Assembly: GCF_046119375.1 (NCBI RefSeq) | Contig: NW_027362764.1 | Span: 804,574,001 to 804,638,000, forward strand | Reading direction: 5' to 3' | Length of the DNA: 64,000 bases | DNA from: Phyllobates terribilis | Lineage: Eukaryota | The notes under the pieces: generated by a model | Told to the model about the DNA's origin: nothing | Databases searched by the model: none | Seen by the model: the letters and a program-made list of their open reading frames with translations, nothing else | Program-made: the position numbers and the translations under genes | Shown here: positions 6,001-60,574 of the stretch, in pieces | Layout: each line of letters opens with the position of its first letter | Numbering within the stretch: the stretch's first letter is position 1

Positions 6001-8737
6001 AGGAGCAGCTCTTATAGTGACGGGACATGGAGCTACAGGAGGCAGGTGAGGAGCAGCTCTTGTGACGGGACATGGAGCTACAGGAGGCAGGTGAGGAGCA
6101 GCTCTTGTAGTGACGGAACATGGAGCTACAGGAGGTAGGTGAGGAGCTGAACTTGTAGTGACGGGACATGGAGCAACAGGAGGCAGGTGAGGAGCAGATC
6201 TTGTAGTGACGGGACATGGAGCTACAGGAGGCAGGTGAGGAGCAGCTCTTGTAGTGACGGGACATGGAGCTACAGGAGGCAGGTGAGGAGCAGCTCTTGT
6301 AGTGACGGGACATGGAGCTACAGGAGGCAGGTGAGGAGCAGCTCTTGTAGTGACGGGACATGGAGCTACAGGAGGCAGGTGAGGAGCAGCTCTTGTAGTG
6401 ACGGGACATGGAGCTACAGGAGGCAGGTGAGGAGCAGCTCTTGTAGTGAGGGGACATGGAGCTACAGGAGGCAGGTGAGGAGCGGCTCTTGTAGTGACGG
6501 GACATGGAGCTACAGGAGGCAGGTGAGGAGCAGCTCTTGTAGTGACGAGACATGGAGCTACAGGAGGCAGGTGAGGAGCAGCTCTTGTAGTGACGGGACA
6601 TGGAGCTACAGGAGGCAGGTGAGGAGCAGCTCTTGTAGTGACGAGACATGGAGCTACAGGAGGCAGGTGAGGAGCAGCTCTTGTAGTGACGGGACATGGA
6701 GCTACAGGACGCAGGTGAGGAGCAGCTCTTGTAGTGACGGGACATGGAGCTACAGGAAGCAGGTGAGGAGCAGCTCTTGTAGTGACGGGACATGGAGCTA
6801 CAGGAGGCAGGTGAGGAGCACCTCTTGTAGTGACGGGACATGGAGCTACAGGACGCAGGTGAGGAGCAGCTCTTGTAGTGACGGGACATGGAGCTACAGG
6901 AGGCAGGTGAGGAACAGCTCTTGTAGTGACGGGACATGGAGCTACAGGAGGCAGGTGAGGAGCAGCTCTTGTAGTGACGAGACATGGAGCTACAGGAGGC
7001 AGGTGAGGAGCAGCTCTTGTAGTGACGGGACATGGAGCTACAGGAGGCAGGTGAGGAACAGCTCTTGTAGTGACGAGACATGGAGCTACAGGAGGCAGGT
7101 GAGGAGCGGCTCTTGTAGTGACGGAACATGGAGCTACAGGAGGTAGGTGAGGAACGGCTCTTGTAGTGACGGGACATGGAGCTACAGGAGGCAGGTGAGG
7201 AGCAGATCTTGTAGTGACGGGACATGGAGCTACAGGAGGCAGGTGAGGAGCAGCTCTTGTAGTGACGGGACATGGAGCTACAGGAGGCAGGTGAGGAGCA
7301 GCTCTTGTAGTGACGGGACATGGAGCTACAGGAGGCAGGTGAGGAGCACCTCTTGTAGTGACAGGACATGGAGCTACAGGAGGCAGGTGAGGAGCAGCTC
7401 TTGTAGTGACAGGACATGGAGCTGCAGGAGGCAGGGGAGGAGCGGCTCTTGTAGTGACGGGACATGGAGCTACAGGAGGCAGGTGAGGAGCAGCTCTTGT
7501 AGTGACGGGACATGGAGCTACAGGAGGCAGGTGAGGAGCAGCTCTTGTAGTGACGGGACATGGAGCTACAGGAGGCAGGTGAGGAGCGGCTCTTGTAGTG
7601 ACGGGACATGGAGCTACAGGAGGCAGGTGAGGAGCAGCTCTTGTAGTGACGGGACATGGAGCTGCAGGAAGAAGGTGAGGAGCAGCTCTTGTAGTGACGG
7701 GACTTGGAGCTACAGGAGGTAGGTGAGGAGCAGATCTTGTAGTGACGGGACATGGAGCTACAGGAGGTAGGCGAGGAGCGGCTCTTGTAGTGACGGGACA
7801 TGGAGCTACAGGAGGCAGGTGAGGAGCAGATCTTGTAGTGACGGGACATGGAGCTACAGGAGGCAGGTGAGGAGCGGATCTTGTAGTGACGGGACATGGA
7901 GCTACAGGAGGTAGGCGAGAAGCGGCTCTTGTAGTGACGGGACATGGAGCTACAGGAGGCAGGTGAGGAGCAGATCTTGTAGTGACGGGACATGGAGCTA
8001 CAGGAGGCAGGTGAGGAGCAGCTCTTGTAGTGACGGGACATGGAGCTATAGGAGGCAGGTGAGGAGCACCTCTTGTAGTGACAGGACATGGAGCTACAGG
8101 AGGCAGGTGAGGAGCGGCTCTTGTAGTGACGGGACATGGAGCTACAGGAGGCAGGTGAGGAGCAGCTCTTGTAGTGACGGTACATGGAGCTACAGGAGGC
8201 AGGTGAGGAGCAGCTCTTGTAGTGACGGGACATGGAGCTACAGGAGGCAGGTGAGGAGCAGATCTTGTAGTGATGGGACATGGAGCTACAGGAGGCAGGT
8301 GAGGAGCAGATCTTGTAGTGACGGGACATGGAGCTACAGGAGGCAGGTGAGGAGCAGCTCTTGTAGTGACGGGACATGGAGCTACAGGAGGCAGGTGAGG
8401 AGCAGCTCTTGTAGTGACGGGACATGGAGCTACAGGAGGAAGGTGAGGAGCACCTCTTGTAGTGACAGGACATGGAGCTACAGGAGGCAGGTGAGGAGCA
8501 CCTCTTGTAGTGACGGGACATGGAGCTACAGGAGGCAGGTGAGGAGCAGCTCTTGTAGTGACGGGACATGGAGCTACAGGAGGCAGGTGAGGAGCGGCTT
8601 TTGTAGTGACGGGACATGGAGCTACAGGAGGCAGGTGAGGAGCATCTCTTGTAGTGAAGGGACATGGAGCTACAGGAGGCAGGTGAGGAGCAGCTCTTGT
8701 AGTGACGGGACATGGAGCTACAGGAGGCAGGTGAGGA
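1..8737. repeat. 48-bp tandem satellite (45-bp variants), ~180 units, runs off the window start
   Basis: Unit GTGAGGAGCAGCTCTTGTAGTGACGGGACATGGAGCTACAGGAGGCAG; 16-aa periodicity in all ORF-track frames; ends 9 nt from the H2B stem-loop. Confidence 0.98.
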
Positions 8738-8746
8738 CGGGGTGGT

Positions 8747-8762
8747 GGCTCTTAGAAGAGCC
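8747..8762 (-). promoter_or_regulatory. Histone 3' stem-loop of H2B
   Basis: Minus strand CCAAA-GGCTCT-TCTA-AGAGCC-ACCAC, 33 nt after the H2B stop. Confidence 0.95.
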
Positions 8763-8795: not shown

Positions 8796-9197
<402 letters not shown>

Positions 9198-10407: not shown

Positions 10408-10980
<573 letters not shown>

Positions 10981-27057: not shown

Positions 27058-27864
27058 ATCGTCCCTCATATAATCTATGATAATAGATGAAGGTGAACGC
27101 TTCTGTGATCGGGGGATGTGATCTGCCGACTACACCGGACACCTCTCCTCCCCGGGGCCGGAGCGGTTCTCCCGCTCATTACACGGAGATGACACGACCC
27201 CTGTATACAGAGATTCCGCTCCATGTACAATGACCGGTAATAACCGCACGAGAACCGCTCGTCTTGACACCGCGTGAAGAGAAAGAGCGGGAGAAGCGGA
27301 GAGTGACTGAGCGGGAAGCTAAAACTCACAAAAGCTCCGGGCATCAGCCAATCAGCACCAAGCATCGAGCTGTAGCTCCGCCCTTCACCCAACACTAAAC
27401 CTGCACAGCTGATGGAAACGCGGAGCCCCAAGGAGCAGCTGTAGAAAATGCCGGCAGAGCATATCCCCCTGTAGATGGAGGAGAGGAGCGGTTAATAAAT
27501 GTCCCCGGAGTCCTGAGGATGATTGTGCGGAGGAAGCAGCAGATGAGCGCTGACAGCTCTATTCTATACAGACACGATCACACCATGTCTACATGCGGCT
27601 TCTACAGCATGAGCCGCCGATGTCACTGTATGTCTATATACCCGGCACACGGAGCTGTACAGCGGCTCCTCGATCAGTCGAAATCATTGGTGTTTTAATT
27701 CCAACATAGAAAAGCCTCACACTCCCCTTTCACTATTACAGACGCGGGTTACAAGCGGTGATTGATCAGGATGTAAGAAATAAGATTTCTTCAGGACATC
27801 GGCCCCTTCCCTCCAATAACTAATGACCCTGAAGCAGCTCCCTGTACACACTATAATATCTGCC

Positions 27865-28274
27865 GGGAACAAGGCGGTGGCACTGATCATACAGCTCTGC
27901 AGGGACAAGGTGGTGACACTGACCATACAGCTCTGCAGGGACAAGGTGGTGACACTGACCATACAGCTCTGCAGGGACAAGGTGGTGACATTGACCATAC
28001 AGCTCTGCAGGGACAAGGTGATGGCACGGATCATACAGCTCTGCAGGGACAAGGTGATGGCACTGATCATACAGCTCTGCAGGGACAAGGTGATGGCACT
28101 GATCATACAGCTCTGCAGGGACAAGGTGATGGCACTGATCATACAGCTCTCCAGGGACAAGGTGGTGACACCGATCATACAGCTCTGCAGGGACAAGGTG
28201 GTGACACCGATCATACAGCTCTGCAGGGACAAGGTGGTGACACCGATCATACAGCTCTGCAGGGACAAGGTGAT
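27865..28274 (-). repeat. 36-bp tandem array beginning at the H1 stem-loop; 11 HDE-like copies
   Basis: Plus-strand ACAGCTCT at 27891, 27927 ... 28251 (36-nt steps); 12-aa periodicity in the ORF track. Confidence 0.95.
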
Positions 28275-28290
28275 GGCTCTGATAAGAGCC
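28275..28290 (-). promoter_or_regulatory. Histone 3' stem-loop of H1 (loop TATC)
   Basis: CACAAA-GGCTCT-TATC-AGAGCC-ATCAC. Confidence 0.92.
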
Positions 28291-28320
28291 TTTGTGGTGT
28301 AATAACAGGACGGCTTTGGA

Positions 28321-28974
28321 CTATTTCTTGGCCGCGGGCTTCTTGGCTTTAGTCGCCTTCTTAGCTGGACTCTTGGCAGCTTTGGGTTTGGCCGCCTTCT
28401 TAGCCGGGCTTTTCGTCACTTTCTTGGGCTTCGGAGCGGCCTTCGGCTTCTTGGGGCTCTTGGCTGGTTTCTTTGCCGCGGCTGCTGTGGGCTTCTTGGT
28501 CTTTTTCGGGCTTTTCTTGGCCGCGGTCGGAGCCTTTTTGGGCTTCTTTGGGGATTTGGCCGCTTTCTTGGCTGCGGGTTTTTTGGGTTTGGCCGCAGCC
28601 GCCGGCTTCTTCTTGGCCGGCTTGTCTTTAGTCTCCTGCTTCTTATTCAGCTTGAAGGAGCCGGAGGCGCCGCTGCCCTTCACCTGGAGCAGGGCGCCCT
28701 TGGTGACCAGAGACCTGACGGCCAACTTCAGGCGGCTGTTGTTCTTCTCCACATCGTACCCGCCGGCAGCCAGAGCCTTCTTCAGGGCGGCCAGAGACAC
28801 CCCGCTGCGCTCCTTAGAGGCGGACACGGCTTTGACGATCAGCTCGGACACGCTGGGACCGGAGGGTTTCTTGCTCTTCTTGGCGCCCCCTGCGGCGGAT
28901 TTCTTCGGCTGCTTCTTGGCTTTGGCGGCCGGTTCGGCGGGAGGAGGAGCGGCGGCTGGCACGGTCTCTACCAT
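28321..28974 (-). CDS. H1: Somatic linker histone H1 (217 aa)
   Basis: [11 protein letters not shown]...; globular domain [45 protein letters not shown]...[14 protein letters not shown]; K/A/P-rich tail with SPKK motifs. Confidence 0.95.
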
Positions 28975-29042
28975 CGTGTGATGAGGAACAGACACAAGAA
29001 TCTCCTGGAAGGAAAACACTGAGGACGGAGCTGGAGGCGCCT

Positions 29043-29125
29043 CTTATATGTACAGTTACACTGCGCACTGATTGGCTGCCTCCTCCTGAGCTTCTATTGG
29101 CTAACACTGGACACAGGCCCTGCCC
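29043..29125 (-). promoter_or_regulatory. H1 promoter (TATA, two CCAAT)
   Basis: Minus TATAAG 29043-29048; CCAAT 29071-29075 and 29096-29100. Confidence 0.75.
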
Positions 29126-32492: not shown

Positions 32493-33111
32493 TCAGGCTC
32501 CGGTCACTGAGGAATTAGGAAATCACCGATTATGGAGAACGGCGACAAGAAATGGTTAACACTGGCGTCTCCTGTGGGCGGAGCCGTGACCTGATGCTCA
32601 ATGATGATTGGCTGAGCCCAGAATTTGAACTTCCCGCTCACTCCTCCTCGCTTTGTCCTCATCTATGTAACACGCGGCGTCAGTGCTGCGGATCTCGAGC
32701 GATCTGCTCGTGTATAGTGATCAGTGGCCGATCTCACTCCACACAGGGGAGATCAGACCCCAATCTGTACAGGGTCTTATGTCTCCAGATCCAGAATTCT
32801 CCCCTGATCACAGCGCAGACCCTCACTGCACTTCATGCCTCATTCTGCAGCCAGTGATCCTGTCGGATCCTCAGCCCTCACAGCTGCGACATCGGTCACC
32901 GATCACTTACACATCCCCCGATCTGCTCATCACCGAGCACTCGTCCCTTCTCTCCACGGTCACTGATGTGACGGATCCCGGGAGCTCAGGGTGGGGGCTT
33001 CTGTTTCTCTGTCCTGCAGATATTTCCCCTCATTACCGCAATCATCAGAGCACAGGACACAACCCCCGGCCCCGCAGCAGGAATCACAGCTTCTCCACTG
33101 TACATGTGGGC

Positions 33112-33127
33112 GGCTCTGATAAGAGCC
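33112..33127 (-). promoter_or_regulatory. Histone 3' stem-loop of H4 copy 1 (loop TATC), HDE-like GGAGAAGCTGTGA
   Basis: CCCAAA-GGCTCT-TATC-AGAGCC-GCCCA. Confidence 0.92.
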
Positions 33128-33159
33128 TTTGGGGGGTGAGGATGGAGCGGAGAACACAA

Positions 33160-33474
<315 letters not shown>

Positions 33475-36156: not shown

Positions 36157-39100
36157 CTAAGAGGATCCTCCGGATCCCCTAGGACCAGGCTTATCAGGAA
36201 ATCTCCTGTGAAACGCTCTGATAAGTCTGGACGCGGAAACATCATCTGACCTCACCCAAGAGTTATCCTCGGGTCCGAAACCTTTCCAGGCCACAAGATA
36301 CTGCAAACTACCTCTATACCGTCTAGAGTTAAGGATGCGAGAAATTTCATATTCCCCGTCCTCCACCACCGGAGGAACAGAGGCAGAGGCGTCACCATCC
36401 GACACAACAGCTTTTTTTAACAGAGAGACATGAAATACCGGATTAATTCTCCAGGAGGTAGGAACCTCCAACCTAACAGCAGATTGGTTAACAACCTGAA
36501 GCACCTTAAAGGGCCCTACAAACTTGGGACCCAATTTCTTAGAAGGAATCCTCAACCGCAGATTCCTAGAGGACAACCAAACCATGTCACCAACAGCGAA
36601 CAAAACCTCCTGTCGTTTCCTATCAAAGTAGTCTTTAGATTTTCTGTTGGCCTCCTGAAGATTACCACGCACATCCGTCCAAACTCTCTCCAAATCACCG
36701 GAAAAATTCTCCTCCTCAGGCACGGCAGATCCCAACTTGGAGAACGACCTAAACGACGGATGTCTCCCAGAACAACAAAAAAAAGGCGAACAACCAGCAG
36801 AAGAAGATGTATGATTGTTCAGAGCAAATTCAGCAAGTGGCAGAAACTCAGACCACCCCTCTTGATTGTCTGCCACAAAACAACGCAAGAACTGCTCAAC
36901 ATCCTGGTTTTTCCTTTCTGTCTGGCCATTAGATTCAGGATGATATCCGGACGAGAACGACAAATGAACTCCCAACCTGTCACAAAAGGCACGCCAAAAA
37001 TGAGCCACGAACTGAGGACCCCTATCAGAAACAATGTCAGTAGGAACGCCATGAAGTCTGACAATTTCCTTGACAAAGGCCTTAGCGAGAGTTTTAGCGC
37101 AGGGCAGTTTGACGAAGGGAACCAAGTGACACATCTTGCTAAAACGGTCCACGACCACCCAGATGACAGTAAAACCCTCAGAGGGGGGAAGGTCAGTTAT
37201 AAAGTCCATAGCCAAATGTGTCCAAGGAGCACTGGGAACCTCCAAAGGACAAAGCAACCCCGCAGCAGGAGTATGTGAGGACTTAGATCTAGCACATATA
37301 GTACATTGACGCACCCACTTAATGACCTCCTTCTGCCATCCAGGCCACCAAAAACTGCGACCCACCAGTCTCTTGGTCTCAGAGATTCCGGGATGACCTG
37401 CCAACCGAGACTCGTGACACTCAACAAACAAATCTCTCCTAAAGGTCCCAGGCACAAACAACCTCCCATGAGGAGTGTTTGATGGGGCATTCTCCTGTGC
37501 TTTAAGAATCTCATCTTCCAAAACGGAGTCCAAAGCAGCTATCACAACACCTTCTTGTAAAATGTTCTCCTCTTTCTCAGCACCGACTATGGGAGAAAAA
37601 CTGCGAGACAAGGCATCCGCCTTAACATTCTTAGTACCAGGGATGTAAGTAACGGAGAAATTAAACCGCGAGAAAAACAGTGCCCACCTAGCCTGACGGG
37701 CATTCAGGCGCTTGGCAGCATCAAGATATATCAGATTTTTATGATCCGTAAGAACCTGAACGGGAAATTCCGCACCTTCCAAGAAGTGGCGCCAGTGTTC
37801 AAATGCGAGTTTAATAGCCAATAATTCCCGATTACCAATATCGTAATTCAGTTCAGTCTCCGAAAGTTTTTTTGAAAAAAAGGCACAGGGATGTAATCCA
37901 TCCCCGTTATCCTGAGACAATACTGCGCCAACCCCCACAGAGGAAGCATCAACCTCAACCAAAAACGGCTTAGTCACATCAGGCTGCATAAGGATGGGAG
38001 CAGAGGTGAACCTCTCCTTGATATACACAAAAGCTTCAATGGCCTCAGAAGACCACTGAACCGCATCAGCACCTTTCCTGGTGAGATCGGTCAGAGGTTT
38101 CACAATACTAGAAAATTTTTTTATGAATTTTCTGTAATAATTGGCGAAACCTAAAAACCTCTGTATCGATTTCAAACCAATAGGCCTAGGCCATTCCTGC
38201 ACAGCTTGAACTTTCACCGGGTCCATCTCCAAACCTTCGCTGGAGATAATGTAGCCCAAAAAACTAATTCTCTGTACAGCGAACTCACATTTCTCCAGCT
38301 TAGCAAAAAGCGAATTGTCCATTAATAACTGTAATACCTCACGTACGCTCCGCCAATGAGATTCCAGATCCGGCGAATAAATCAAAATGTCATCCAAATA
38401 CACAACCACATTTTTGCCGATCAAAGGTCTAAGGATGTCATTAATCAGATTCTGAAAAAATGCAGGAGCATTAGTAAGACCAAAAGGCATAACCAGATTC
38501 TCAAAATGACCCACAGGAGTGTTAAAAGCAGTCTTCCATTCATCACCCTCCTTCATGCGCAACAGATTGTATGCCCCCTTAAGGTCAATTTTAGAGAACC
38601 ACTTGGCCCCCATTAACTGGTTAAACAGATCAGGAATCAATGGCAGTGGGTAAGGATTGCGTACAGTAATTTTGTTAATCTCACGAAAATCCAGACAAGG
38701 ACGTAAACCGCCGTCCTTTTTTTTTACAAAAAAAAATCCAACCGCCACAGGAGACTTAGAGGGCCTAATGTGACCGGCGGCCAAACTTGTCTGTATGTAT
38801 TCCTCCAAAGCCTTCCTCTCAGGAATAGTAAGGTTAAATAAACGACTTTTAGGAAGAGTCGCTCCAGGGACAAATTCAATAGAACAATCATAGTCTCTAT
38901 GGGGAGGCAAAACCTGCGATTCCTTCTCAGAAAAAACTCTCCAAAAATCCTGAATAGGAACAGGCAATTCTCCCCTATCCAAAGCTGCAATACGCCCGTT
39001 ACAACACTTGTCATAACATTTATGGCTCCAGGATTTAATTTCACTGGTAGACCAATCCAGTACAGGATTGTGAAATTTTAACCAGGGCAATCCCAATATT

Positions 39101-39789
39101 ACTGGAGAAGGCAAGTTATTCAAAACTACCAAATCCAATTTCTCATGGTGAACACCATTAATAGTGAGAGGAAATTCACAGACCTTGAGAGTAATATTCT
39201 TCAAAGGGGAACCATCCACAGAAACCACAGCAATGGGGGATGATAAAGGTTCGGGTTTTAAATTGAGTCTTTCCAAGAATCCCCCATCAATTACATTCAG
39301 AGTAGACCCACAATCAACAAACACCCGAAATTCCATTAATTTTTCCTGAGCAATCGTGGAAGCAGCTAAAAATACACCCTTGGAATTTAAACAGGCAATA
39401 CGGGCATGACTGACCTTTTTTTTTTCTTTCTTCATACGAAGCTCACAGCCTTTAATCAAATGACCAGATTTTCCGCAATAGAAACACAAGCCTTCAAAAA
39501 ATCTACGGTCTTTTTCTTGAGAGTGAGGTGCCACCGATCCAATCTCCATCGGTTCACCACTGTTAGTACACACATTCTCATAACCAGAAACTGACATAGC
39601 AGAGGATTTGCTCTCATTAACCCTTGCACGCAGTCTCCTATCCACCCATATAGCTAATTGCATAGCCTGTTGCAAATCTTCAGGTGTAGGATAAGCAATT
39701 AGCAGGTCTTTAACCCTTTCATTGAGCCCAGCAAGAAATAGACTTTTCAGAGCATATGAAGTGATGGTATGGTCACGGGAGAAATACAT
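36157..39789 (-). CDS. pol: Uninterrupted CCHC-PR-RT-RNaseH-IN-chromodomain ORF (1210 aa)
   Basis: CFYCGKSGHLIKGC; FVDCGS; YLDDIL; VEVDASS; HESRLAGH..CTIC; MDF..DRGPQF..GQTER; EYEISRIL...YLVAWKGFGPEDNSW. First 11 aa come from the inserted element. Confidence 0.9.
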   Translation of the reverse strand: MYFSRDHTITSYALKSLFLAGLNERVKDLLIAYPTPEDLQQAMQLAIWVDRRLRARVNESKSSAMSVSGYENVCTNSGEPMEIGSVAPHSQEKDRRFFEGLCFYCGKSGHLIKGCELRMKKEKKKVSHARIACLNSKGVFLAASTIAQEKLMEFRVFVDCGSTLNVIDGGFLERLNLKPEPLSSPIAVVSVDGSPLKNITLKVCEFPLTINGVHHEKLDLVVLNNLPSPVILGLPWLKFHNPVLDWSTSEIKSWSHKCYDKCCNGRIAALDRGELPVPIQDFWRVFSEKESQVLPPHRDYDCSIEFVPGATLPKSRLFNLTIPERKALEEYIQTSLAAGHIRPSKSPVAVGFFFVKKKDGGLRPCLDFREINKITVRNPYPLPLIPDLFNQLMGAKWFSKIDLKGAYNLLRMKEGDEWKTAFNTPVGHFENLVMPFGLTNAPAFFQNLINDILRPLIGKNVVVYLDDILIYSPDLESHWRSVREVLQLLMDNSLFAKLEKCEFAVQRISFLGYIISSEGLEMDPVKVQAVQEWPRPIGLKSIQRFLGFANYYRKFIKKFSSIVKPLTDLTRKGADAVQWSSEAIEAFVYIKERFTSAPILMQPDVTKPFLVEVDASSVGVGAVLSQDNGDGLHPCAFFSKKLSETELNYDIGNRELLAIKLAFEHWRHFLEGAEFPVQVLTDHKNLIYLDAAKRLNARQARWALFFSRFNFSVTYIPGTKNVKADALSRSFSPIVGAEKEENILQEGVVIAALDSVLEDEILKAQENAPSNTPHGRLFVPGTFRRDLFVECHESRLAGHPGISETKRLVGRSFWWPGWQKEVIKWVRQCTICARSKSSHTPAAGLLCPLEVPSAPWTHLAMDFITDLPPSEGFTVIWVVVDRFSKMCHLVPFVKLPCAKTLAKAFVKEIVRLHGVPTDIVSDRGPQFVAHFWRAFCDRLGVHLSFSSGYHPESNGQTERKNQDVEQFLRCFVADNQEGWSEFLPLAEFALNNHTSSSAGCSPFFCCSGRHPSFRSFSKLGSAVPEEENFSGDLERVWTDVRGNLQEANRKSKDYFDRKRQEVLFAVGDMVWLSSRNLRLRIPSKKLGPKFVGPFKVLQVVNQSAVRLEVPTSWRINPVFHVSLLKKAVVSDGDASASVPPVVEDGEYEISRILNSRRYRGSLQYLVAWKGFGPEDNSWVRSDDVSASRLIRAFHRRFPDKPGPRGSGGSS

Positions 39790-42657: not shown

Positions 42658-45600
42658 GTGGCGCCGACTGAGGAGGACCCCACCGTCCAGAGGAAGACAG
42701 AGCGACCGGTACAACGAGGACGGACAACCCATCTGACGCCGTTGCAATCAACCCGGACATATGGCAAGGTACTGTCATTTAAACAGGCACAACCTGGGGT
42801 AGAGGGCCAACCCCCAGGCATAAGATCATCAGGCCCATCAAACTGGCGTGACAAGTACGTAGGGGGACGTCCGGTCTTGCCTGTGGTACTGGACGGCATT
42901 CCTATGAGTGCCCTACTAGACACCGGGTCACAGGTCATCACCATCCCGTACGTGCTCTTCAAGCGGTACTGGAATGACTCGGACATAACCCGCTACCCAG
43001 ATGATGACCTGAGCATTATCGCCAGCAATGGTCAGCCCGTGCCACAGATAGGATTTAAAGAGGTGACCATCAAGGTCGGTAAAGTTGAACTGCCGGCACA
43101 AGGATTTATCATTGTGGACATTGACCGTCGCGAGAGTCACCCAAAAATAACCCTAGGTACTAACGTAATTGAAAACTGTCTTGCAGAGGTGATTCTCATT
43201 TTACAGCAGGTTGCCAAGAACGCCAGTTCCAGCCAGCAGCGTGTCCTCCAAAAAGAGATCCGGGCACTGATGAAGCGGCAACAGGTGGAACTATCTGGTG
43301 GTGAGATAGGTAGCGTGAGAATGTGTGACCCTTTCCCTATTGCCCTGCCCCCAAAAAGTGAGATGATGATTTGGTGCCGGGCAGCTATTGGTCTAAGAGG
43401 TAGAGACTACCAAGCAATGGTAGAACCCGTCTACTCAGACAGTAGGCCCACTATTTTGACAGCACGGGGGGTGGTTGATGTACGCCATGGGAGGGTGCCC
43501 GTCCGCATCATCAATATCGGGGAGAGAGAAGTATACCTGCCCCGGTATGCCACGCTAGCCAAATTGTTCACCATCAACCAGAACTCTGTACAGGCCGTGG
43601 AACCCTTGCCTCCATCTCCACCAGAGGAAGGTAACGGCTCTAAGAAACCAATGGAGGACTGGTGTCAGCAGCTGCATTTGGGTACTGACTCCACTCCCTC
43701 ACACCAAAAACAGGGAGTCTACCGGGTGGTTCAAGAGTACGAGAGAGTGTTTAGTAAACACCCGCTAGACTTCGGGCGAGTAAAGGGGGTAAAGCATCAC
43801 ATCCCCACGGGAGACCATCCTCCCATAAAGGAGAGATACCGACCCGTACCCCCTGCACACTATCAACACGCCAAGGGGATGCTAAAAGACATGAAGGAGG
43901 CTGGGGTAATTAGGGACAGCTGTAGCCCCTGGGCAGCTCCACTAGTCTTAGTGAAAAAGAAAGACAACACCATGAGAATGTGTGTAGACTACAGGAAGGT
44001 CAACCGTATCACACACAAAGATGCGTACCCGTTACCAAGGATAGAAGAGTCCTTAGCTGCATTAAAATCTGCTAACTTCTTCTCTACTTTGGATCTCACT
44101 AGCGGGTACTGGCAGGTTCCTGTAGCAGAGGCGGACCGGGAGAAGACCGCATTCACCACCCCGATGGGACTCAGCGAATTTAACTGTATGCCGTTCGGGC
44201 TCTGCAATGCACCAGGAACCTTCCAACGGTTGATGGAATGCTGTCTGGGACACCGGAACTTCGAGACGGTCCTACTATACCTGGATGACGTCATCGTCTA
44301 TTCCAAGACCTATGAGGACCATCTGGAACACCTGGCAGAAGTGTTTGAAGCCCTGGCAAACTATGGCCTAAAAGTAAAGCCCTCAAAGTGTCACCTACTG
44401 AAGCCAAAGGTACAGTACCTGGGACACGTGGTGAGTGCTGACGGAGTAGCCCCCGACCCTGACAAGATCACCGTGATTAAGGACTGGCCAAGACCATCCA
44501 GCATAAAGTAAGTGCGGCAGTTCCTCGGGTTGGTAGGCTACTACCGAAGATTCATTCCCGGTTTTACCAAGAAGGCAGCTCCTATGCAGGACCTCCTGAT
44601 AGGCCAGTCCAGGAAGGCCAAAAACCAGAAGCCACCCTTCAAATGGGAAAAGCTGGAAGAGGAGTCCTTCCACCAGCTGAAGATGGCCCTCACGGGGGAT
44701 GAAATCCTAGCGTACCCTGATTACAGCCAGCCCTTTATCCTCTACACGGACGCAAGCAACATCGGGCTAGGAGCCGTACTGTCCCAGATCCAGCAGGGGA
44801 GAGAGCGGGTAATTGCTTACTCCAGCCGAAAACTGCGACCCACGGAAAGAAACCCTGAGAATTGCAGCTCGTTCAAGCTAGAGTTCCTGGCAGTGGTGTG
44901 GGCAGTAACCGAACGTTTCAAGCATTACCTTGCCTCTTCCAGGTTCACCGTGTACACGGACAACAACCCGTTGACACACCTGGACACCGCAAGACTGGGT
45001 GCCCTGGAGCAGAGATGGATGGCCTGCCTGTCCAATTATGAGTTCACGATCAAATACCGGGCAGGACGCTCCAATACCAACGCGGACGCCCTGTCCAGGA
45101 TGCCAAACCTACCGGACGAAGGGGAGGATCCAGAAGAATTGGAAGCGATCGAACTCCCTGCGTTTCACCGCCATGGGATTACCCAGTATTCCCACCGTGT
45201 GAGGGGCCAGCGATCCGCTACGTTCAACCCCTTACCCCACTACAACTGGGCGGAGACGCAAGACAGTGATCCCGCAGTCTGTCTGGTGAAGGAGATGCTG
45301 ACGCCCGCCTGGACCCAGACACTCCGGAAGAGACCAAGCAACTGTGGACGGAAAAGAGCAGACTGTTTCTCTACAAGGAGAAGTTGTGCCGCAGAATGGT
45401 CAATTCCCGGACACATGAGCTGATCTGGCAGGTGGTGGTACCGAGACGGGACGCAGCTATGGTGCTGGAGGCCTACCACAATGGGGCAGGGCACTTCGGA
45501 TGGAAGAAGCTGGAGTTCCTGTTGCGTGAACGGTTCTGCTGGATAGGCATGAGAGGAGCCATTGAGAGGTGGTGTAGAGACTGTGGCCCGTGCAATCTAA

Positions 45601-46904
45601 GAAGAAGGGACCGTGCCAGCCAGAGGACTCCCCTGCAGCCCATCATCACCAGGCAGCCGCTGGAACTGGTCGCTCTGGACCATGTTAAACTGGCTCCAAG
45701 CAGAAGCGGGTATGTCTAGGCCCTAACCATCGTGGATCACTACTCCCGGTTCCTGGTGGTGGTCCCTGTCAAAGACCTGACGGCTCAGACAGCAGCCAGA
45801 GCCTTCCAGCTGCACTTCAGCCGCCCACACGGGTACCCGGACAAAGTGCTGACGGACCAAGGACCAGCCTTCGAAGCGGAGGTCTTCCAGGAGTTCTGCA
45901 ACCTGTATGGCTGCAAGAAGATAAGAACAACGCCCTATCACCCCCAAACCTATGTACTCTGCGAGAAGATGAACCAGGTGGTGATAGATCTGCTAAAAAC
46001 ATTGCCCCTGGAAGAACGCAGTCTGTGGCCTGAGAAGCTGCCCGATCTGGTGGACCTGTATAACCACATCCCGGTAGGTTCCACCAACTGTACCCCGGCT
46101 TACCTAATGCGAGCAAGACCTGGTAAGCTGCCTATTGACCTGGATATGGGAGTCCTGACGCCTGAGGACACCTCGCCAGAGGCAGACTGGGATACAGAAC
46201 GGCAGCAGCAGTATCGGAAAGTACAGGAGAGCGTCGAGCGAAGTCTGTCTCAAGCTAGAGAAAGGCAAGAGAAGGCTTATAACAAATATGCTCCCGCTGT
46301 TCCCCTGGTACCTGGAGAGCAGGTCTTGAAGAGGAAGAGGCGGCTCCACAAGTTGGACGACCAGTGGGAGAAGGACCCGTACACCGTACTGCCATCAAGC
46401 CATGAGAACCCAAAAATCTGCGTAATCAGTAAGGATGGAGGAGAAACCACAGCCATTGTCTCCAGAGACCACCTGAAGAAGTGTCCCGAGCAGCTGCAAA
46501 GCCCTGAAGAAGATCAAGGAAACCCTCAACCCGCAGAGGAAAGGGAAGAAATGATCAGTACCGTACTCGGAGACTTCCCCCGGTCTTGGACACAAGTAAA
46601 CGGCGCTGTCGTGGTACCCGTCCTCACCTTTCTCCAGCCAGCCCCGCAAGTGCCTACAGAGGAACCGGTAAAGCTGGAAGAGCAGCCGGCCCAAGAGGCA
46701 GAAGAGTCCACACCAGCAGTACAGGAGGATCAACCCTCTGCTAGTAGTGAGCCTGCCGTGCCCCTAGTGAGCCAAAGAGTGCGCAGACAGCTGCCCAGCT
46801 TACCCATAACACCTCCTACACCCTGTAGTGCAGAACCAGTTAGTGAGCTCCGGAGGTCCACTAGAGTCACTAGAGGTCAGATGCCCGCTCGCTGGAGAAT
46901 CTAA
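42658..46904 (+). pseudogene. pol: Outer Gypsy pol (PR, RT, RNase H, IN) with two stops and a frameshift
   Basis: LLDTGSQV; YLDDVIV; LYTDASNIGLGAVL; HNGAGH..CGPC; LTDQGPAF; ORF breaks at 44511, about 45400 and 45719. Confidence 0.92.
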
Positions 46905-52678: not shown

Positions 52679-55600
52679 TTATGTTACTCTGCTGTCTTTT
52701 GGTGGTGATGAGAAGTCTGGCCCAATCCAGCCCTTGTTCATTTTGATAAGGGTCAGCTTGTCAACATTGTCAGTTGACAGGCGAGTGTGCTTATCAGTTA
52801 TAATTCCCCCAGCGGCACTAAAAACACACTCCGATAACACGCTGGCGGCAGGGCAGGCCAGGACCTCCAATGCGTACAGAGCGAGTTCATTCCAAGTGTC
52901 CAGCTTGGATACCCAATAATTAAAAGGCACAGAGGAATCACGGAGGATGCTGGTACGGTCGGCAAGGTACTCCCTCACCATCTTTGGAAACTTTCCACTC
53001 CTTGTGAGAGTACCCCGCGCCTCAGGGCCTGTAAGCTGGGCGGGTCTCAGAAAACTGTCCTAGAACGTTGACAGTGTTCCCCTGCCTTTGCTGGATTGGA
53101 GTTGCGTCTCTCTCGCTTGTACGCCTTGGTTGGTCAATGAACTGTGACCTCTGCCGCTAGCGTGTTCAGATGGGAATTTTTTTAACAGTTCTGCAGCAAG
53201 GGCCTTCTGGTACTGCCCCATTTTTGTAGACCTCTCCACCTCAGGAATAAGAGAGAGAAAGTTGTCCTTGTAGCGGGGGACTAAAAGTGTCACCAACCAG
53301 TAATGACTGTCACCCAACATTTTGACAACGCGAGGGTCACGGTTAAGGCAGCGTAACATAAAGTCAGCCATGCGTGCCAGACTGGTAACGGGCAAGACTT
53401 CCGTGTCCTCACCAAGATGACGACTGACCATGCTCTCCTCCTCCTCCTCATCCTCACCCCTGTCCTCAGGCCACCAACGCTGAACCGACGGTATGACAGT
53501 TGTACAGGTACTACCGTCTACAGCGCATGATACAAGCTCCTGTTCTTCCTCCTCCTCCTCCTCCTCCTCTCCCCCATTGTCCCCCGTTGGGATGAGATGA
53601 GGCTGGGCTGTGTGTAATCGCCCATTACGGCTTCTTGATCCATCTCATCATACTCTGGCTGCAATGCCTCCTCTTTAGTTCTCTGCAGAGGGCGTTGCAA
53701 AAGACAGACAAGTGGAATGCTGACGCTAATGATGGCATCATCGCCACTCACCATCTTGGTGGACTCCTCAAAGTTTGTCAGGATGGTACATATGTCAGAC
53801 ATCCAGGTCCACTCCTGAGGTCTTATGTGTGGAGTCTGACCTGAATATCGACGACTTTGTTGCAGCTGGTACTCCACAACTGCTCTCTTCTGCTCACAAA
53901 TCCTTTGCAACATGTGGAGGGTAGAGTTCCAACGTGTGGGGACATCACACACCAGTCGGTGTGATGGAAGCTGCAAACGCTGCTGCAACACAGCAAGGGC
54001 GGCGGAAGCTGTAGCCGACTTGCGAAAATGAGCTGATAGGCGGCGTACTTTGACGAGCAGATCTGGAAACTCGGGGTATGATTTAAGAAACCACTGAACC
54101 ATGAGGTTAAGCACATGAGCCAGGCATGGTACGTGTGTGATCTCTCCTCGCCTCCGAGCCGCCACCAGGTTACGGCCATTGTCACACACGACCATGCCTG
54201 GATGTAGGTTTAGCGGTCTCAGCCACAGATCTGCCTGCTCTTTCACAGCTGTCCACAACTCACAAGCAGTGTGAGGTTTCTCACCTAAGCTTAGGAGTTT
54301 CAGCACAGCCTGTTGCCGCTTGGCTGAGGCAGTACTGCAGTGTTTCCAGCTTGTAACTGATGTGGTGATATCTGAGATGGAGGCTGAACATGAGGAGGAG
54401 GAGGATGATGGCAAGGAGCTGTACACTGTGGGGGCAACTCTGACTGACAAAGGGCCCGCAATCCTCGGTGTGGGTAGGATGTGTTCCATCCCAAGGTCCG
54501 ACTGGGTCACGGCTTCCACTATGTTTACCCAGTGTGCCGTCAGGGAGATGTACCGTCCCTGGCCACAAGCACTTGTCCACGTGTCCGTTGTCAGGTGGAC
54601 TCTCCCGGTAACTGCGTTGTTGAGGGCACGGCAGATGTTTTGGGACACGTGCTTGTGTAGTGCAGGGATGGGACATCGGGCAAAATAGTGTCGGCTGGGG
54701 ACCGAGTACCGAGGGACGGCCACCGCCATAAGGTTGCAGAAGGATTCCGTCTCCACCAGCCTAAAAGGCAGCATTTCCAACGCAAGTAGTCGTGAAATGT
54801 GCGAATTTAGGACTGTGGCCTGTGGGGCGTTAGCTGTGAATTTCCGCTTTCGTTCAAAGGTCTGGGATATGGACAATTGAACACTGCGGTGGGACGTGGA
54901 CGTGGACGTTGATGCTGTTTCTTGAGAAACTGCCATAACAAGTGAAGACTGAGAGGAGGGGGCATCTTTGCATGCAGTATGGACAGGGGATTGCCTTGCA
55001 CACACAACAGGGGGTTCTATTGCACGCACAACAGCGGTAGAAGCAGTGGTGACACCCGCTGACACTGGTCGTGGACCCTGGGGTTCGCCCAACAAAGTCG
55101 GGTGCTTTGCTGACATGTGCCTGATCATGCTGGTGGTGGTCAGGCTGGTAGTTTTGTCACCCCTGCTGATGCTGGCATGGTGGTACAAATAGCCTTTTTG
55201 GGGTTATCAGCAGAGTCTTTAAAAAAATTCCAGACTCTGGAAGACCTACCTGTTGTACTGGCAACATCCCTCGTGTTGGTGTTATGGGGAACTGTTGCCC
55301 GCCTTCTGTGTGTGGCCACCACACTGCTTCTTCCTGCCTGTTGGGGTACTCAGCCTCCCTCATCCTGTGTGCTGCTGGCCTCGCTCTGCATGTCCTCCTG
55401 CCACGTTGGGTCAGTTACTAGATCATCCACCACTTCCTCCTCTTCCACTTGCGCACCACGATCCTCTTCCTCACTTCCTGGCAATTGTGTCTCGTCATCG
55501 TCCACCTCTTGTGACAGATTGCCAACGTCGACTTCCTGTGGCCGTGGCTGTTCAAATATTTGGGCATCGCTACATGGGATCTCCTCTTCCACCACTTCAA

Positions 55601-56027: not shown

Positions 56028-57856
56028 TGTAAAGGAAATAAAATAGCTAATACTCGCACTATCAATGGAAAAAGGGTAATAAAAAGTAGATTAGAGCCGT
56101 GGAAGAGGAAAACCACAGTTCTATTTCTCTGACCTACACCCGACTCTTTTAAACAATCTGAACAATCAGGGAGAAACTATTACTGTTTTTCTTTACGGAA
56201 AAAATACCAAAAGCTGAATAATAGAGATTTTTTACCGTGGAATGGCAAAACCACAGTTATTGTTCACTGTGGTATACCAGAAAATTTTAAATAGATATAT
56301 TTGCGGCTGAAAAGTGAGCAACACACTCAAACTGTTTTTTTTTAGGTAAAACTGGCCCAAAAGTGGATAATACAGAGGTTTGAACCGTGGAACTACAAAA
56401 CCACACTTGTATTTCTCGGGCCTACACCAGACTATTTTCAACAGATATATTTGTGTCTGAACAATCAGGAGACACTACAGTTTTTCTTTACGGCAAAAAA
56501 TGCAAAAAAGCAGGATAATACAGAGATATGACCCGTGGAGCTACAAAACCACACTTGTATTTCTCGGGCCTACACCAGACTATTTTCCTGCTCCCTCCTT
56601 CCTGCTCTCTCCTTCATGTTCCCTCCTTCCTCATGTGCTGAGGAGGAGGATCATTTATTCTCTCATCATCTGTCGCATTTGGTGAATGTTTTCATGTTTG
56701 GTGAACTAAGGAGATTTTAGGAATGTCATCCGGTGTAGTCGCTGGATACAATCCTCCCATCACAGACCTGTTCATCTTTATCTGTGTTCACTGAAATTAT
56801 GTATTAGATTTAGCGGATAGATGCTGTATATATATGTATACCCCCATATAGTGCTGTATATATATGTATACCCCTATATAGTGCGGTATATCCCGACATC
56901 CCAATATAGTGCTGTGTGTATATATTGTGTATATATATAAATATATATCATTTTTATCCAATATATATTTAAAAAATTAAACAAACAGAAATGTTACAAT
57001 GAGCGGGAAATTCTAAATCACTAATTGCTCTGTGACCGACCAATCAGAGAGAAGGAGATGAACGTGTAACCGGTAACATACACGCCCCTGTCCGCGTCAT
57101 CCGTCTCCTCTCTGGTCCGCACAGCCGGGTGCTCATCTGTCCTGTGCTCGGTGACTGCAGGGGATGTTCCGCCCGGTAGGACGATCGGGTGTGTATTTAT
57201 CCCCAGAGCAAACGTCAGGCTCCTGTCACTGAGGAATTAGGAAATCACCGATTATGGAGAACGGCGGCAAGAAATGGTTAACACCGGCGTCTCCTGTGGG
57301 CGGAGCCGTGACCTGATGCTCAATGATTGGCTGAGCCCAGAATTTGAACTTCCCGCTCACTCCTCCCTCGCTTTGTCCTCATCCATGTAACACGCGGCGT
57401 CAGTGCTGCGGATCTCGGGCGATCTGCTTGTGTATAGTGATCAGTGGCCGATCTCACTCCACACAGGGGAGATCAGACCCCAATCTGTACAGGGTCTTAG
57501 GTCTCCAGATCCAGAATTCTCCCCTGATCACAGCGCAGACCCTCACTGTACTTCATGCCTCATTCTGCAGCCAGTGATCCGGTCAGATCCTCAGCCCTCA
57601 CAGCTGCGACATCGGTCACCGATCACTTACACATCCCCCGATCTGCTCATCACCAAGCACTCGCCCCTTCTCTCCCCGGTCACTGATGTGACGGATCCCG
57701 GGAGCTCAGGGTGGGGGCTTCTGTTTCTCTGTCCTGCAGATATTTCCCCTCATTACCGCAATCATCAGAGCACAGGACACAACCCCCGGCCCCGCAGCAG
57801 GAATCACAGCTTCTCCATTGTACATGTGGGGGGTGAGGATGGAGCGGAGAACACAA

Positions 57857-58171
<315 letters not shown>

Positions 58172-60558: not shown

Positions 60559-60574
60559 GGCTCTTAGAAGAGCC
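60559..60574 (-). promoter_or_regulatory. Histone 3' stem-loop of H2A, HDE-like ACAAGAGCCG downstream
   Basis: CCAAA-GGCTCT-TCTA-AGAGCC-ACCCA. Confidence 0.93.

What the first reader, a model, noticed from the sequence alone, without database searches (positions are those of the whole stretch)
27865..28290. Independent second HDE array: 11 x 36 bp starting at the H1 cleavage site
Seen: the unit begins with the stem's 3' end and cleavage region (GCCATCACC) and contains AGAGCTGTA; the first copy sits 16 nt after the stem, and the 9 nt are a perfect complement of U7 UACAGCUCU. The rest of the unit is unrelated to the 48-mer. Inference: two histone classes independently amplified the same functional element, which points to a mechanism (selection for multivalent U7 binding, or instability tied to 3'-end processing/R-loops) rather than chance. 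With the H2B array this is the best candidate for an undescribed system here.
Basis: partly seen in the sequence, partly recalled or inferred. Interest (0 to 1): 0.8.

Follow-up and report, generated by a model that had tools for sequence, protein, structure and literature searches.

The report
Repeat array grown from H1 tail
Behind a poison-frog histone H1 gene, the short signal that tells the cell where to cut the H1 message has been copied about twelve times head to tail; the copying is real and seems undescribed, but the extra copies look like ordinary passenger repeat DNA and not a new RNA-processing system.

Summary
A 36-bp x 11.8 tandem array (27859-28283) starts inside the loop of the minus-strand H1 stem-loop. 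All 11 full units carry AGAGCTGTA, which is complementary to the UACAGCUCU stretch near the U7 5' end, and the first copy lies 16 nt after the stem. The 9-mer occurs nowhere else in the window. Unit 1 is very probably the working H1 processing signal.

Units 2-12 have no 5' stem arm and offer only a 9-bp U7 duplex, which published work found too weak without SLBP. HDE invariance over 11 units is not significant (P=0.11). In the companion H2B 48-mer array the U7-like motif is among the least conserved parts of the unit (intact in 55% of 166 units). RNA-library contigs show mature H1 mRNA and only traces of array sequence.

Arrays abutting two of six stem-loops is unlikely by chance (P~6e-4). 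One H4 copy has its stem-loop cleanly deleted. This favours a mutational hotspot over selection.

Best reading: a neutral minisatellite born from the H1 3' flank. The scan found the same 36/37-mer family before on other DNA of this genome, in arrays from 13 copies up to 43.8 kb, and those follow-ups reached the same verdict.

The parts
29040..29104 (-). Putative H1 promoter: two CCAAT boxes (from 29100 and 29075) and a TATAAG about 70 nt before the ATG
   Evidence: Direct reading of the minus strand and motif search. No AAACACA H1 box was found within 426 nt. Function is inferred.
28321..28974 (-). Histone H1 coding sequence, 217 aa plus stop, intact
   Evidence: Translation. Pfam Linker_histone at E=2e-22. 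Closest proteins are Phyllobates terribilis and Ranitomeya H1. RNA-library contigs cover it.
28291..28320 (-). Short H1 3' UTR between the stop codon and the stem-loop
   Evidence: Sequence. This exact UTR was not covered by the RNA contigs of organism A; the expressed paralogues carry a different UTR (loose ends).
28275..28290 (-). Histone stem-loop GGCTCTTATCAGAGCC (6-bp stem, 4-nt loop), the SLBP site
   Evidence: Pattern scan. Rfam RF00032 at 31.5 bits, E=3.9e-7, the only match in 27800-28400.
28270..28274 (-). Expected cleavage zone (ATCAC, 4-5 nt after the stem)
   Evidence: Inferred from the known rule for histone pre-mRNA (PMC7026596). Not measured; only assembled contigs were available.
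28250..28258 (-). First histone downstream element core AGAGCTGTA, 16 nt after the stem; the likely working U7 site of this H1 gene
   Evidence: Predicted duplex with the mouse U7 5' region is -14.0 kcal/mol and starts at +16, the same place as in the H3, H4 and H2A genes of this window (+15 to +17).
27859..28283 (-). Whole 36-bp tandem array (11 full units plus one partial); unit = loop/3' stem arm + cleavage region + spacer + HDE
   Evidence: TRF. Units in register. A profile search gives sharp limits at 27853-28283 and no degenerate copies elsewhere in the window.
27888..28247 (-). Units 2-11: passenger copies in three blocks of subtypes (units 2-4, 5-8, 9-11), each with AGAGCTGTA but with AGTGCC or AGTGTC in place of the stem arm and no 5' arm
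   Evidence: Variable sites fall at unit positions 1, 4, 5, 6, 8, 11 and 25.
27852..27887 (-). Unit 12: diverged edge unit (13 mismatches, one inserted base) that loses the HDE (GCAGA then TATTATA)
   Evidence: A decayed edge unit is typical of arrays that are homogenised in the middle.

Best explanation
This is a minisatellite that grew out of the 3'-processing signal of a histone H1 gene of the golden poison frog, Phyllobates terribilis. Unit 1 is the real signal. SLBP binds the stem-loop, and U7 snRNP pairs with AGAGCUGUA 16 nt downstream. CPSF73 then cuts 4-5 nt after the stem. This part is inferred from canonical anatomy. Units 2-12 are passenger copies. They were probably made by replication slippage and unequal exchange seeded at or in the small stem-loop palindrome, and they then spread and changed in number along with the tandemly repeated histone cluster. 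They are transcribed at most as part of the short-lived downstream cleavage product or rare read-through RNA. They have no stem-loop and only a 9-bp U7 duplex, so they are not expected to act as independent processing sites. The location next to the stem-loop reflects a local mutational hotspot, not selection for many U7 sites.
For: Shown:
- The array is regular, with subtype blocks and a decayed edge unit, as expected for unequal exchange.
- Unit 1 overlaps the true stem-loop, and its HDE sits at the canonical +16, as in the other histone genes here.
- Only one Rfam stem-loop match lies in the region.
- 24% of the window is tandem arrays, 18 in all.
- HDE invariance over 11 units is not significant (P=0.11). 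The clustering of variable sites in unit positions 1-11 is borderline after correction (0.05), and some of those sites are CpG-linked.
- Contigs from other copies of the family carry a G>T change inside the HDE and 37-mer variants.
- In the sister H2B array the U7-like 8-mer ranks 47th of 48 windows for conservation and is intact in 55% of 166 units.
- RNA-library contigs: in the run with the highest H1 depth (~15,000) the array bins reach 0-48 and the stem-loop bin 195. No run covers 27400-27855. An RNA search with the array stretch found almost nothing.
- Two other H1 genes, Spea bombifrons and an unnamed Logan contig, have one stem-loop, one HDE and no array.
- A third rearrangement sits exactly at a stem-loop: an H4 copy with a 23-bp stem-loop deletion between CCC microhomologies.

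Published: a 9-bp uninterrupted duplex gave under 5% processing with a stem-loop and none without (PMC7026596).

Earlier scan notes, unchecked here: the same family ranges from 13 copies to 43.8 kb, including one array behind a broken H1.
Against: - All 11 full units keep the 9-mer, and 24 of the 25 positions from the cleavage region to the HDE are invariant. Raw clustering P=0.0014, which could reflect constraint.
- Two arrays abutting stem-loops is non-random (P=6e-4). Selection could also explain this.
- Array sequence is present in RNA libraries of three species. In one library (X9) it reaches a depth similar to the coding sequence, so some transcription is possible.
- The array RNA is unusually unstructured (z=+1.86), which would leave the motifs accessible.
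- Units of the family are kept in two other species at 88% likeness or more.
- No raw reads were available, so phased cleavage was not tested.
Confidence: 0.78

Rival explanations
1. Fail-safe processing or termination array. If U7 snRNP misses the first HDE, the next copies, emerging every 36 nt on the nascent RNA, give further chances to cut. 3'-5' trimming back to the SLBP-protected stem-loop would then yield normal H1 mRNA, or the repeated cuts would speed polymerase release.
For: Eleven intact, evenly spaced 9-mers, each preceded at the right distance by a cleavage-region copy. The array RNA is unstructured. Contigs of organism C run past the stem-loop into units 1-2 at about 0.3-1% of coding depth, so the array is at least sometimes transcribed. 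Local U7 and FLASH concentration is known to limit histone 3'-end formation (abstract of PMC4896052).
Against: There is no stem-loop in units 2-12. A 9-bp duplex without SLBP was not cleaved in mouse extract. The sister H2B array lets its U7 motif decay. Copy number ranges from 12 to over 1,000, and one array lies behind a broken H1, which does not fit a tuned device (unchecked notes). Other frogs manage with a single HDE.
Confidence: 0.09
2. U7 landing pad or histone-locus-body scaffold. Read-through RNA carrying tens to hundreds of U7 sites concentrates, or alternatively titrates, U7 snRNP at the histone clusters, for example on oocyte lampbrush chromosomes.
For: Amphibian oocyte spheres (histone locus bodies) sit at histone loci and contain U7 snRNP, and read-through and satellite transcription occur on lampbrush chromosomes (PMC12046345). 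Array sequence is found in RNA libraries of three species. Large blocks of the family lie in histone regions (unchecked).
Against: There is no direct evidence. Array depth in RNA libraries may come from traces of genomic DNA, because the family is highly repeated. The region just distal to the array has zero depth. The motif decays in the H2B array. The duplex is weak at 9 bp.
Confidence: 0.05
3. Assembly artefact, or a chance motif in an unrelated minisatellite.
For: Arrays of short repeats are hard to assemble, and copy number here may be imprecise. One RNA-library contig joins units 144 nt (4 units) apart.
Against: Units of the array are seen in contigs of four independent runs from three organisms, and DNA runs from several samples hold the stretch. 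Unit 1 overlaps a genuine stem-loop with the HDE at canonical spacing. The 9-mer is expected about once in the window by chance and occurs 11 times.
Confidence: 0.03

Closest known systems
Canonical metazoan replication-dependent histone 3'-processing signal (stem-loop + HDE, SLBP + U7 snRNP + CPSF73)
   Same: Unit 1 together with the stem-loop has the full anatomy: a 6-bp stem with a 4-nt loop and an A-rich 5' flank, a cleavage region, and a U7-complementary core 16 nt after the stem, as in the H3, H4 and H2A genes of the same window.
   Different: The segment from the loop to the HDE is repeated about 12 times. Known histone genes, including the two other H1 genes fetched here, have a single HDE. 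Units 2-12 lack the 5' stem arm.
Minisatellites / VNTRs in gene flanks and satellite DNA in amphibian histone clusters (newt histone clusters embedded in satellite DNA with read-through transcription; from my own knowledge of Gall-lab work, touched on in PMC12046345)
   Same: A head-to-tail array with subtype blocks and a decayed edge unit. Copy number differs between paralogous clusters. It sits in a cluster where 24% of the sequence is tandem arrays.
   Different: The unit is not anonymous spacer DNA. It is a copy of the gene's own RNA-processing signal.
PcP190 satellite of hyloid frogs, derived from 5S rDNA
   Same: A frog satellite family whose unit descends from a functional genic sequence and has spread beyond its source gene (PMC11675491 and PMC4201667). 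For the H1 family, the spread rests on earlier scan notes.
   Different: PcP190 comes from a transcribed RNA gene and has a unit of about 190 bp. Here the source is a 36-nt cis-acting processing signal of a protein-coding gene, and the first unit is still in place and probably still working.

Membership tests
Histone 3'-processing signal (stem-loop + HDE) | 16-nt stem-loop with a 6-bp stem, a 4-nt loop and an A-rich 5' flank | tested here: met
   Unit 1 region only: GGCTCTTATCAGAGCC at 28290..28275. Rfam RF00032 gives 31.5 bits, E=3.9e-7, just under the gathering score of 34.
Histone 3'-processing signal (stem-loop + HDE) | U7-complementary element about 10-17 nt downstream of the cleavage site | tested here: met
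   AGAGCTGTA lies 16 nt after the stem and forms a 9-bp perfect duplex with the mammalian U7 5' region at -14.0 kcal/mol, in the same position as the other histone genes here. The frog U7 itself was not available.
Histone 3'-processing signal (stem-loop + HDE) | Each repeat unit is a complete signal with its own stem-loop | tested here: not met
   Units 2-12 carry only a mutated 3' arm (AGTGCC or AGTGTC) and no 5' arm. No second Rfam match lies in 27800-28400.
Histone 3'-processing signal (stem-loop + HDE) | Cleavage 4-5 nt after the stem in vivo | not testable with these tools
   Only assembled Logan contigs were served. No read ends were reported (table 6: none).
Minisatellite / satellite DNA | Head-to-tail units of constant period with high identity | tested here: met
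   Period 36, 11.8 copies, 94% matches, 0% indels.
Minisatellite / satellite DNA | Signs of unequal exchange: blocks of unit subtypes and a diverged edge unit | tested here: met
   Units 2-4, 5-8 and 9-11 form three subtypes. Unit 12 has 13 mismatches.
Minisatellite / satellite DNA | Copy number varies between loci or individuals | tested here: inconclusive
   A contig joins units 144 nt apart, and 37-mer variants exist. Earlier scan notes give 13, about 20, 40, 48, 320 and 1,200 copies at other loci; these were not re-examined here.
Minisatellite / satellite DNA | No coding or structured-RNA role for the repeat | tested here: met
   Repeat ORFs match no Pfam family above cut-off. The array RNA folds worse than 198 of 200 shuffles.
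   H1 array: invariance of the 9-mer has P=0.11, and a G>T change in the HDE is seen in other copies. H2B array: the motif ranks 47th of 48 windows for conservation and is intact in 55% of units.
   The duplex is 9 contiguous bp. Published work found 9 bp gave under 5% processing with a stem-loop and none without (PMC7026596). This inference carries over from mouse extract.

The most novel reading that the evidence does not exclude
The H1-tail repeat is a natural multivalent U7 snRNP landing pad. On nascent read-through RNA its evenly spaced HDE copies capture U7 snRNP. This would give back-up cleavage and termination for H1. In the large blocks elsewhere in the genome, it would help concentrate U7 in histone locus bodies of poison-frog oocytes.
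Probability: 0.07. Interest if true: 0.75.

Novelty: new member of a known kind. Interest (0 to 1): 0.3.

Why it matters
If it is neutral, as I think, this is a tidy and apparently undescribed example of a satellite or minisatellite family born from a cis-acting RNA-processing signal. It also hints that the small histone stem-loop palindrome is a hotspot for duplication and deletion: three breakpoints sit at stem-loops in this one window. That matters for annotating giant frog genomes and for understanding how satellites start. If the extra copies did bind U7 snRNP, the array would be a natural test of how site number and spacing affect histone 3'-end formation and histone-locus-body assembly. 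Nothing tested here supports that.

Tried and rejected
- Fetching genomic DNA around H1 genes of close relatives (Phyllobates, Ranitomeya) failed because the files were too large. The cluster look-up gave no Logan copies. Cross-species evidence for close relatives therefore rests only on contigs laid.
- No U7 gene lies in the window, and no open paper printing a frog U7 sequence was found. Pairing was therefore judged against the human and mouse U7 sequences.
- A coding explanation for the open frames across the repeat is rejected: there is no Pfam match above cut-off, and a 36-bp period keeps frames open trivially.
- A structured-RNA explanation is rejected.
- Common ancestry of the 36-mer and the 48-mer is rejected.
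- Decayed array copies in the flanks or elsewhere in the window are rejected. A local excess of AGCTGTA-like words at 27367-27653 amounts to only three hits on the opposite strand.
- The bacterial-type promoter and terminator scan does not apply to a frog and was ignored.
- A first profile attempt on the 48-mer returned no units. It was replaced by substitution-only matching.
- Literature searches for HDE tandem arrays or histone-derived satellites in frogs found nothing relevant.

Full report
**What is there**

The window is a histone gene cluster of a frog. The exact H1 protein is encoded on an 816.9-Mb chromosome of assembly GCA_046119375.1. The only protein hit whose longest contig has that same length is named Phyllobates terribilis, and the best-scoring hit comes from that species too.

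All histone genes in the window lie on the minus strand:
- H2B at 8796-9188
- H3 at 10408-10818
- H1 at 28321-28974
- an H3 variant from 32004
- H4 just above its stem-loop at 33112-33127
- a second H4 at 57857-58171
- an H2A 3' end with its stem-loop at 60559-60574

The cluster is itself tandemly repeated with an offset of about 37.4 kb, and the copies are 96.9% identical. Tandem arrays make up 24% of the window, 18 arrays in all.

**The observation**

TRF reports a 36-bp array of 11.8 copies at 27859-28283, with 94% matches and no indels. On the H1 sense strand, the stem-loop GGCTCTTATCAGAGCC (28290..28275) is followed by ATCACCTTGTCCCTGC and then AGAGCTGTA, so the motif starts exactly 16 nt after the stem.

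Read in register from the loop (28283), there are 11 full units and a diverged 12th. Every full unit contains AGAGCTGTA. The 9-mer occurs 11 times in the window, all in the array, against about one expected. A profile of the unit finds nothing else in the window and gives sharp limits.

AGAGCUGUA is the perfect complement of UACAGCUCU in the human and mouse U7 sequences printed in PMC7026596. The frog's own U7 was not available.

The predicted duplex with the mammalian U7 5' region is -14.0 kcal/mol and starts at +16. In the H3, H4 and H2A genes of this window the best duplex starts at +15 to +17 and scores -10.5 to -14.6. The first copy is therefore placed where a working HDE should be.

Rfam's histone stem-loop model matches the H1 stem-loop at 31.5 bits, just under its gathering score of 34. 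It finds no second match in 27800-28400. The unit starts inside the loop. And only units 1 and 5-8 read GCCATCACC.

**Where the array came from**

Unit 1 is the real signal. The later units copy the segment from the loop and 3' arm to the HDE, but with AGTGCC or AGTGTC in place of the arm and with no 5' arm. Because the stem-loop is a universal feature of these genes, the direction of descent is from gene to repeat.

The units fall into three blocks of subtypes (units 2-4, 5-8 and 9-11), and the distal edge unit is decayed. This is the usual mark of growth by local duplication and unequal exchange. The 36-mer shares nothing significant with the 48-mer behind H2B apart from the AGAGCTG core (p=0.12), so the two arrays are independent in sequence.

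Two other H1 genes have one stem-loop, one purine-rich HDE and no array in the 3' flank. One is from the spadefoot Spea bombifrons and the other is from an unnamed Logan contig.

**Is the location chance?**

Two of six stem-loops have an array starting within -10 to +15 nt of the stem end: H1 inside the loop, and H2B 10 nt after the stem. Random placement of the window's 18 arrays gives this in 0.06% of trials.

In addition, the second H4 copy has a clean 23-bp deletion that removes exactly its stem-loop between CCC microhomologies, while keeping its HDE and its open reading frame. That makes three rearrangements with breakpoints at stem-loops in one window. I read this as a local mutational hotspot, from hairpin-promoted slippage or transcription-linked breakage. 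This step is an inference.

**Do the extra copies work?**

Several lines argue against it.

1. Units 2-12 have no stem-loop, so SLBP cannot help U7 bind.
2. The duplex is only 9 contiguous base pairs. In mouse nuclear extract, a substrate reduced to 9 uninterrupted pairs gave under 5% product even with its stem-loop, and its stem-loop-less version was not cleaved. Only 15-16-bp duplexes are SLBP-independent (PMC7026596).
3. Conservation gives no clear sign of selection.
   - With seven variable unit positions, having none in the 9-mer has P=0.11.
   - The clustering of variable sites in positions 1-11 has P=0.0014 raw and about 0.05 after allowing for the choice of segment. Some of those sites are CpG-linked, or reflect the real stem in unit 1.
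   - Contigs from other copies of the family show a G>T change inside the HDE and one-base insertions that make 37-mers.
4. In the sister H2B array, which has enough units for a real test, the U7-like 8-mer ranks 47th of 48 windows for conservation. Its mean consensus frequency is 0.897 against 0.972 for the rest of the unit, and it is intact in 55% of 166 units. The first such 8-mer also lies 43 nt after the H2B stem, far from the canonical place.

**RNA evidence**

Only assembled Logan contigs were served, so read ends could not be examined.
- Contigs of four libraries from three organisms cover the H1 coding region.
- In the library with the highest H1 depth (organism C, about 15,000), depth falls to 195 in the bin holding the stem-loop, to 48 in the next bin, and to 0-37 further along the array.
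- No library covers the 450 nt distal to the array.
- A search for RNA runs holding the array stretch itself found next to nothing.
- One library of organism A shows array words at a depth similar to the coding region. These match internal subtypes and 37-mer variants, do not join this gene's 3' UTR, and could come from traces of genomic DNA, since the family is highly repeated.

Overall, the mature mRNA ends at the stem-loop and some read-through into the first units exists. Units of the family are present, at 88% likeness or more, in two other species.

**Earlier scan notes**

The scan has met this family before on other DNA of the same genome. Arrays were noted behind other H1 genes with about 13, 20, 40 and 48 copies, including one behind a broken H1. 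Stand-alone blocks of 11.7 kb (a 37-mer) and at least 43.8 kb were also noted. Four follow-ups judged them neutral satellite DNA, as did a follow-up on the H2B 48-mer. I did not re-examine those loci. My own H2B test and the 37-mer variants in contigs agree with them.

**Comparison with what is known**

Unit 1 is an ordinary histone processing signal. The array as a whole is a minisatellite. The closest parallel for a repeat family descended from a functional genic sequence in frogs is the PcP190 satellite, derived from 5S rDNA.

Amphibian histone loci are known to carry U7-containing histone locus bodies, and amphibian lampbrush chromosomes to show read-through transcription. This is why a U7-scaffold reading cannot be dismissed outright. 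Searches of the open literature found no description of tandemly repeated HDEs.

**Verdict**

Best explanation (0.78): a neutral minisatellite seeded at the H1 stem-loop, with only its first unit working.

Noticed in passing
window 57780-58171 (minus); compare 33060-33170: The second H4 copy has an intact 103-aa reading frame and keeps its HDE (GGAGAAGCTGTGA). A clean 23-bp deletion between CCC microhomologies has removed exactly its stem-loop, so its mRNA could not end in the normal way.
   Followed up: partly
window 8700-8762 (minus): The H2B gene has no U7-complementary element at the canonical +15 to +17 after its stem-loop. The first AAGAGCTG lies 43 nt after the stem, at the end of the first 48-mer unit, so the array seems to have displaced the original HDE. 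Within the 48-mer array that 8-mer is among the least conserved parts of the unit.
   Followed up: partly
window 1-64000: Tandem arrays make up 24% of the window (18 arrays with periods of 24-388 bp). The histone cluster is itself repeated with an offset of about 37.4 kb at 96.9% identity. Array copy numbers differ between the two copies: the 47-mer has 6.6 versus 8.6 copies, and the 28-mer has 33.6 versus at least 17 (the second is cut by the window end).
   Followed up: partly
window 27340-27500 (+ strand): A CCAATCAG box like the one in the H1 promoter, followed by an AATAAA-like stretch, sits between the 28-mer and 36-mer arrays and points toward the array. It may be a remnant histone-type promoter. 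No RNA contigs cover it.
   Followed up: no
window 28322 and 28325 (loose ends of RNA contigs): The H1 paralogues that dominate the RNA libraries carry a different 3' UTR from this copy (…GGACAGAGCGGCTGCGCT on the + strand). Expression of this exact H1 copy is therefore not shown.
   Followed up: no
window 36157-39789, 42658-46904, 53518-55188: Large retroelement pol-like reading frames (1210 aa; 617, 303 and 390 aa) and a 556-aa reading frame of unknown family sit between the histone genes, so the cluster spacers are filled with mobile elements.
   Followed up: no
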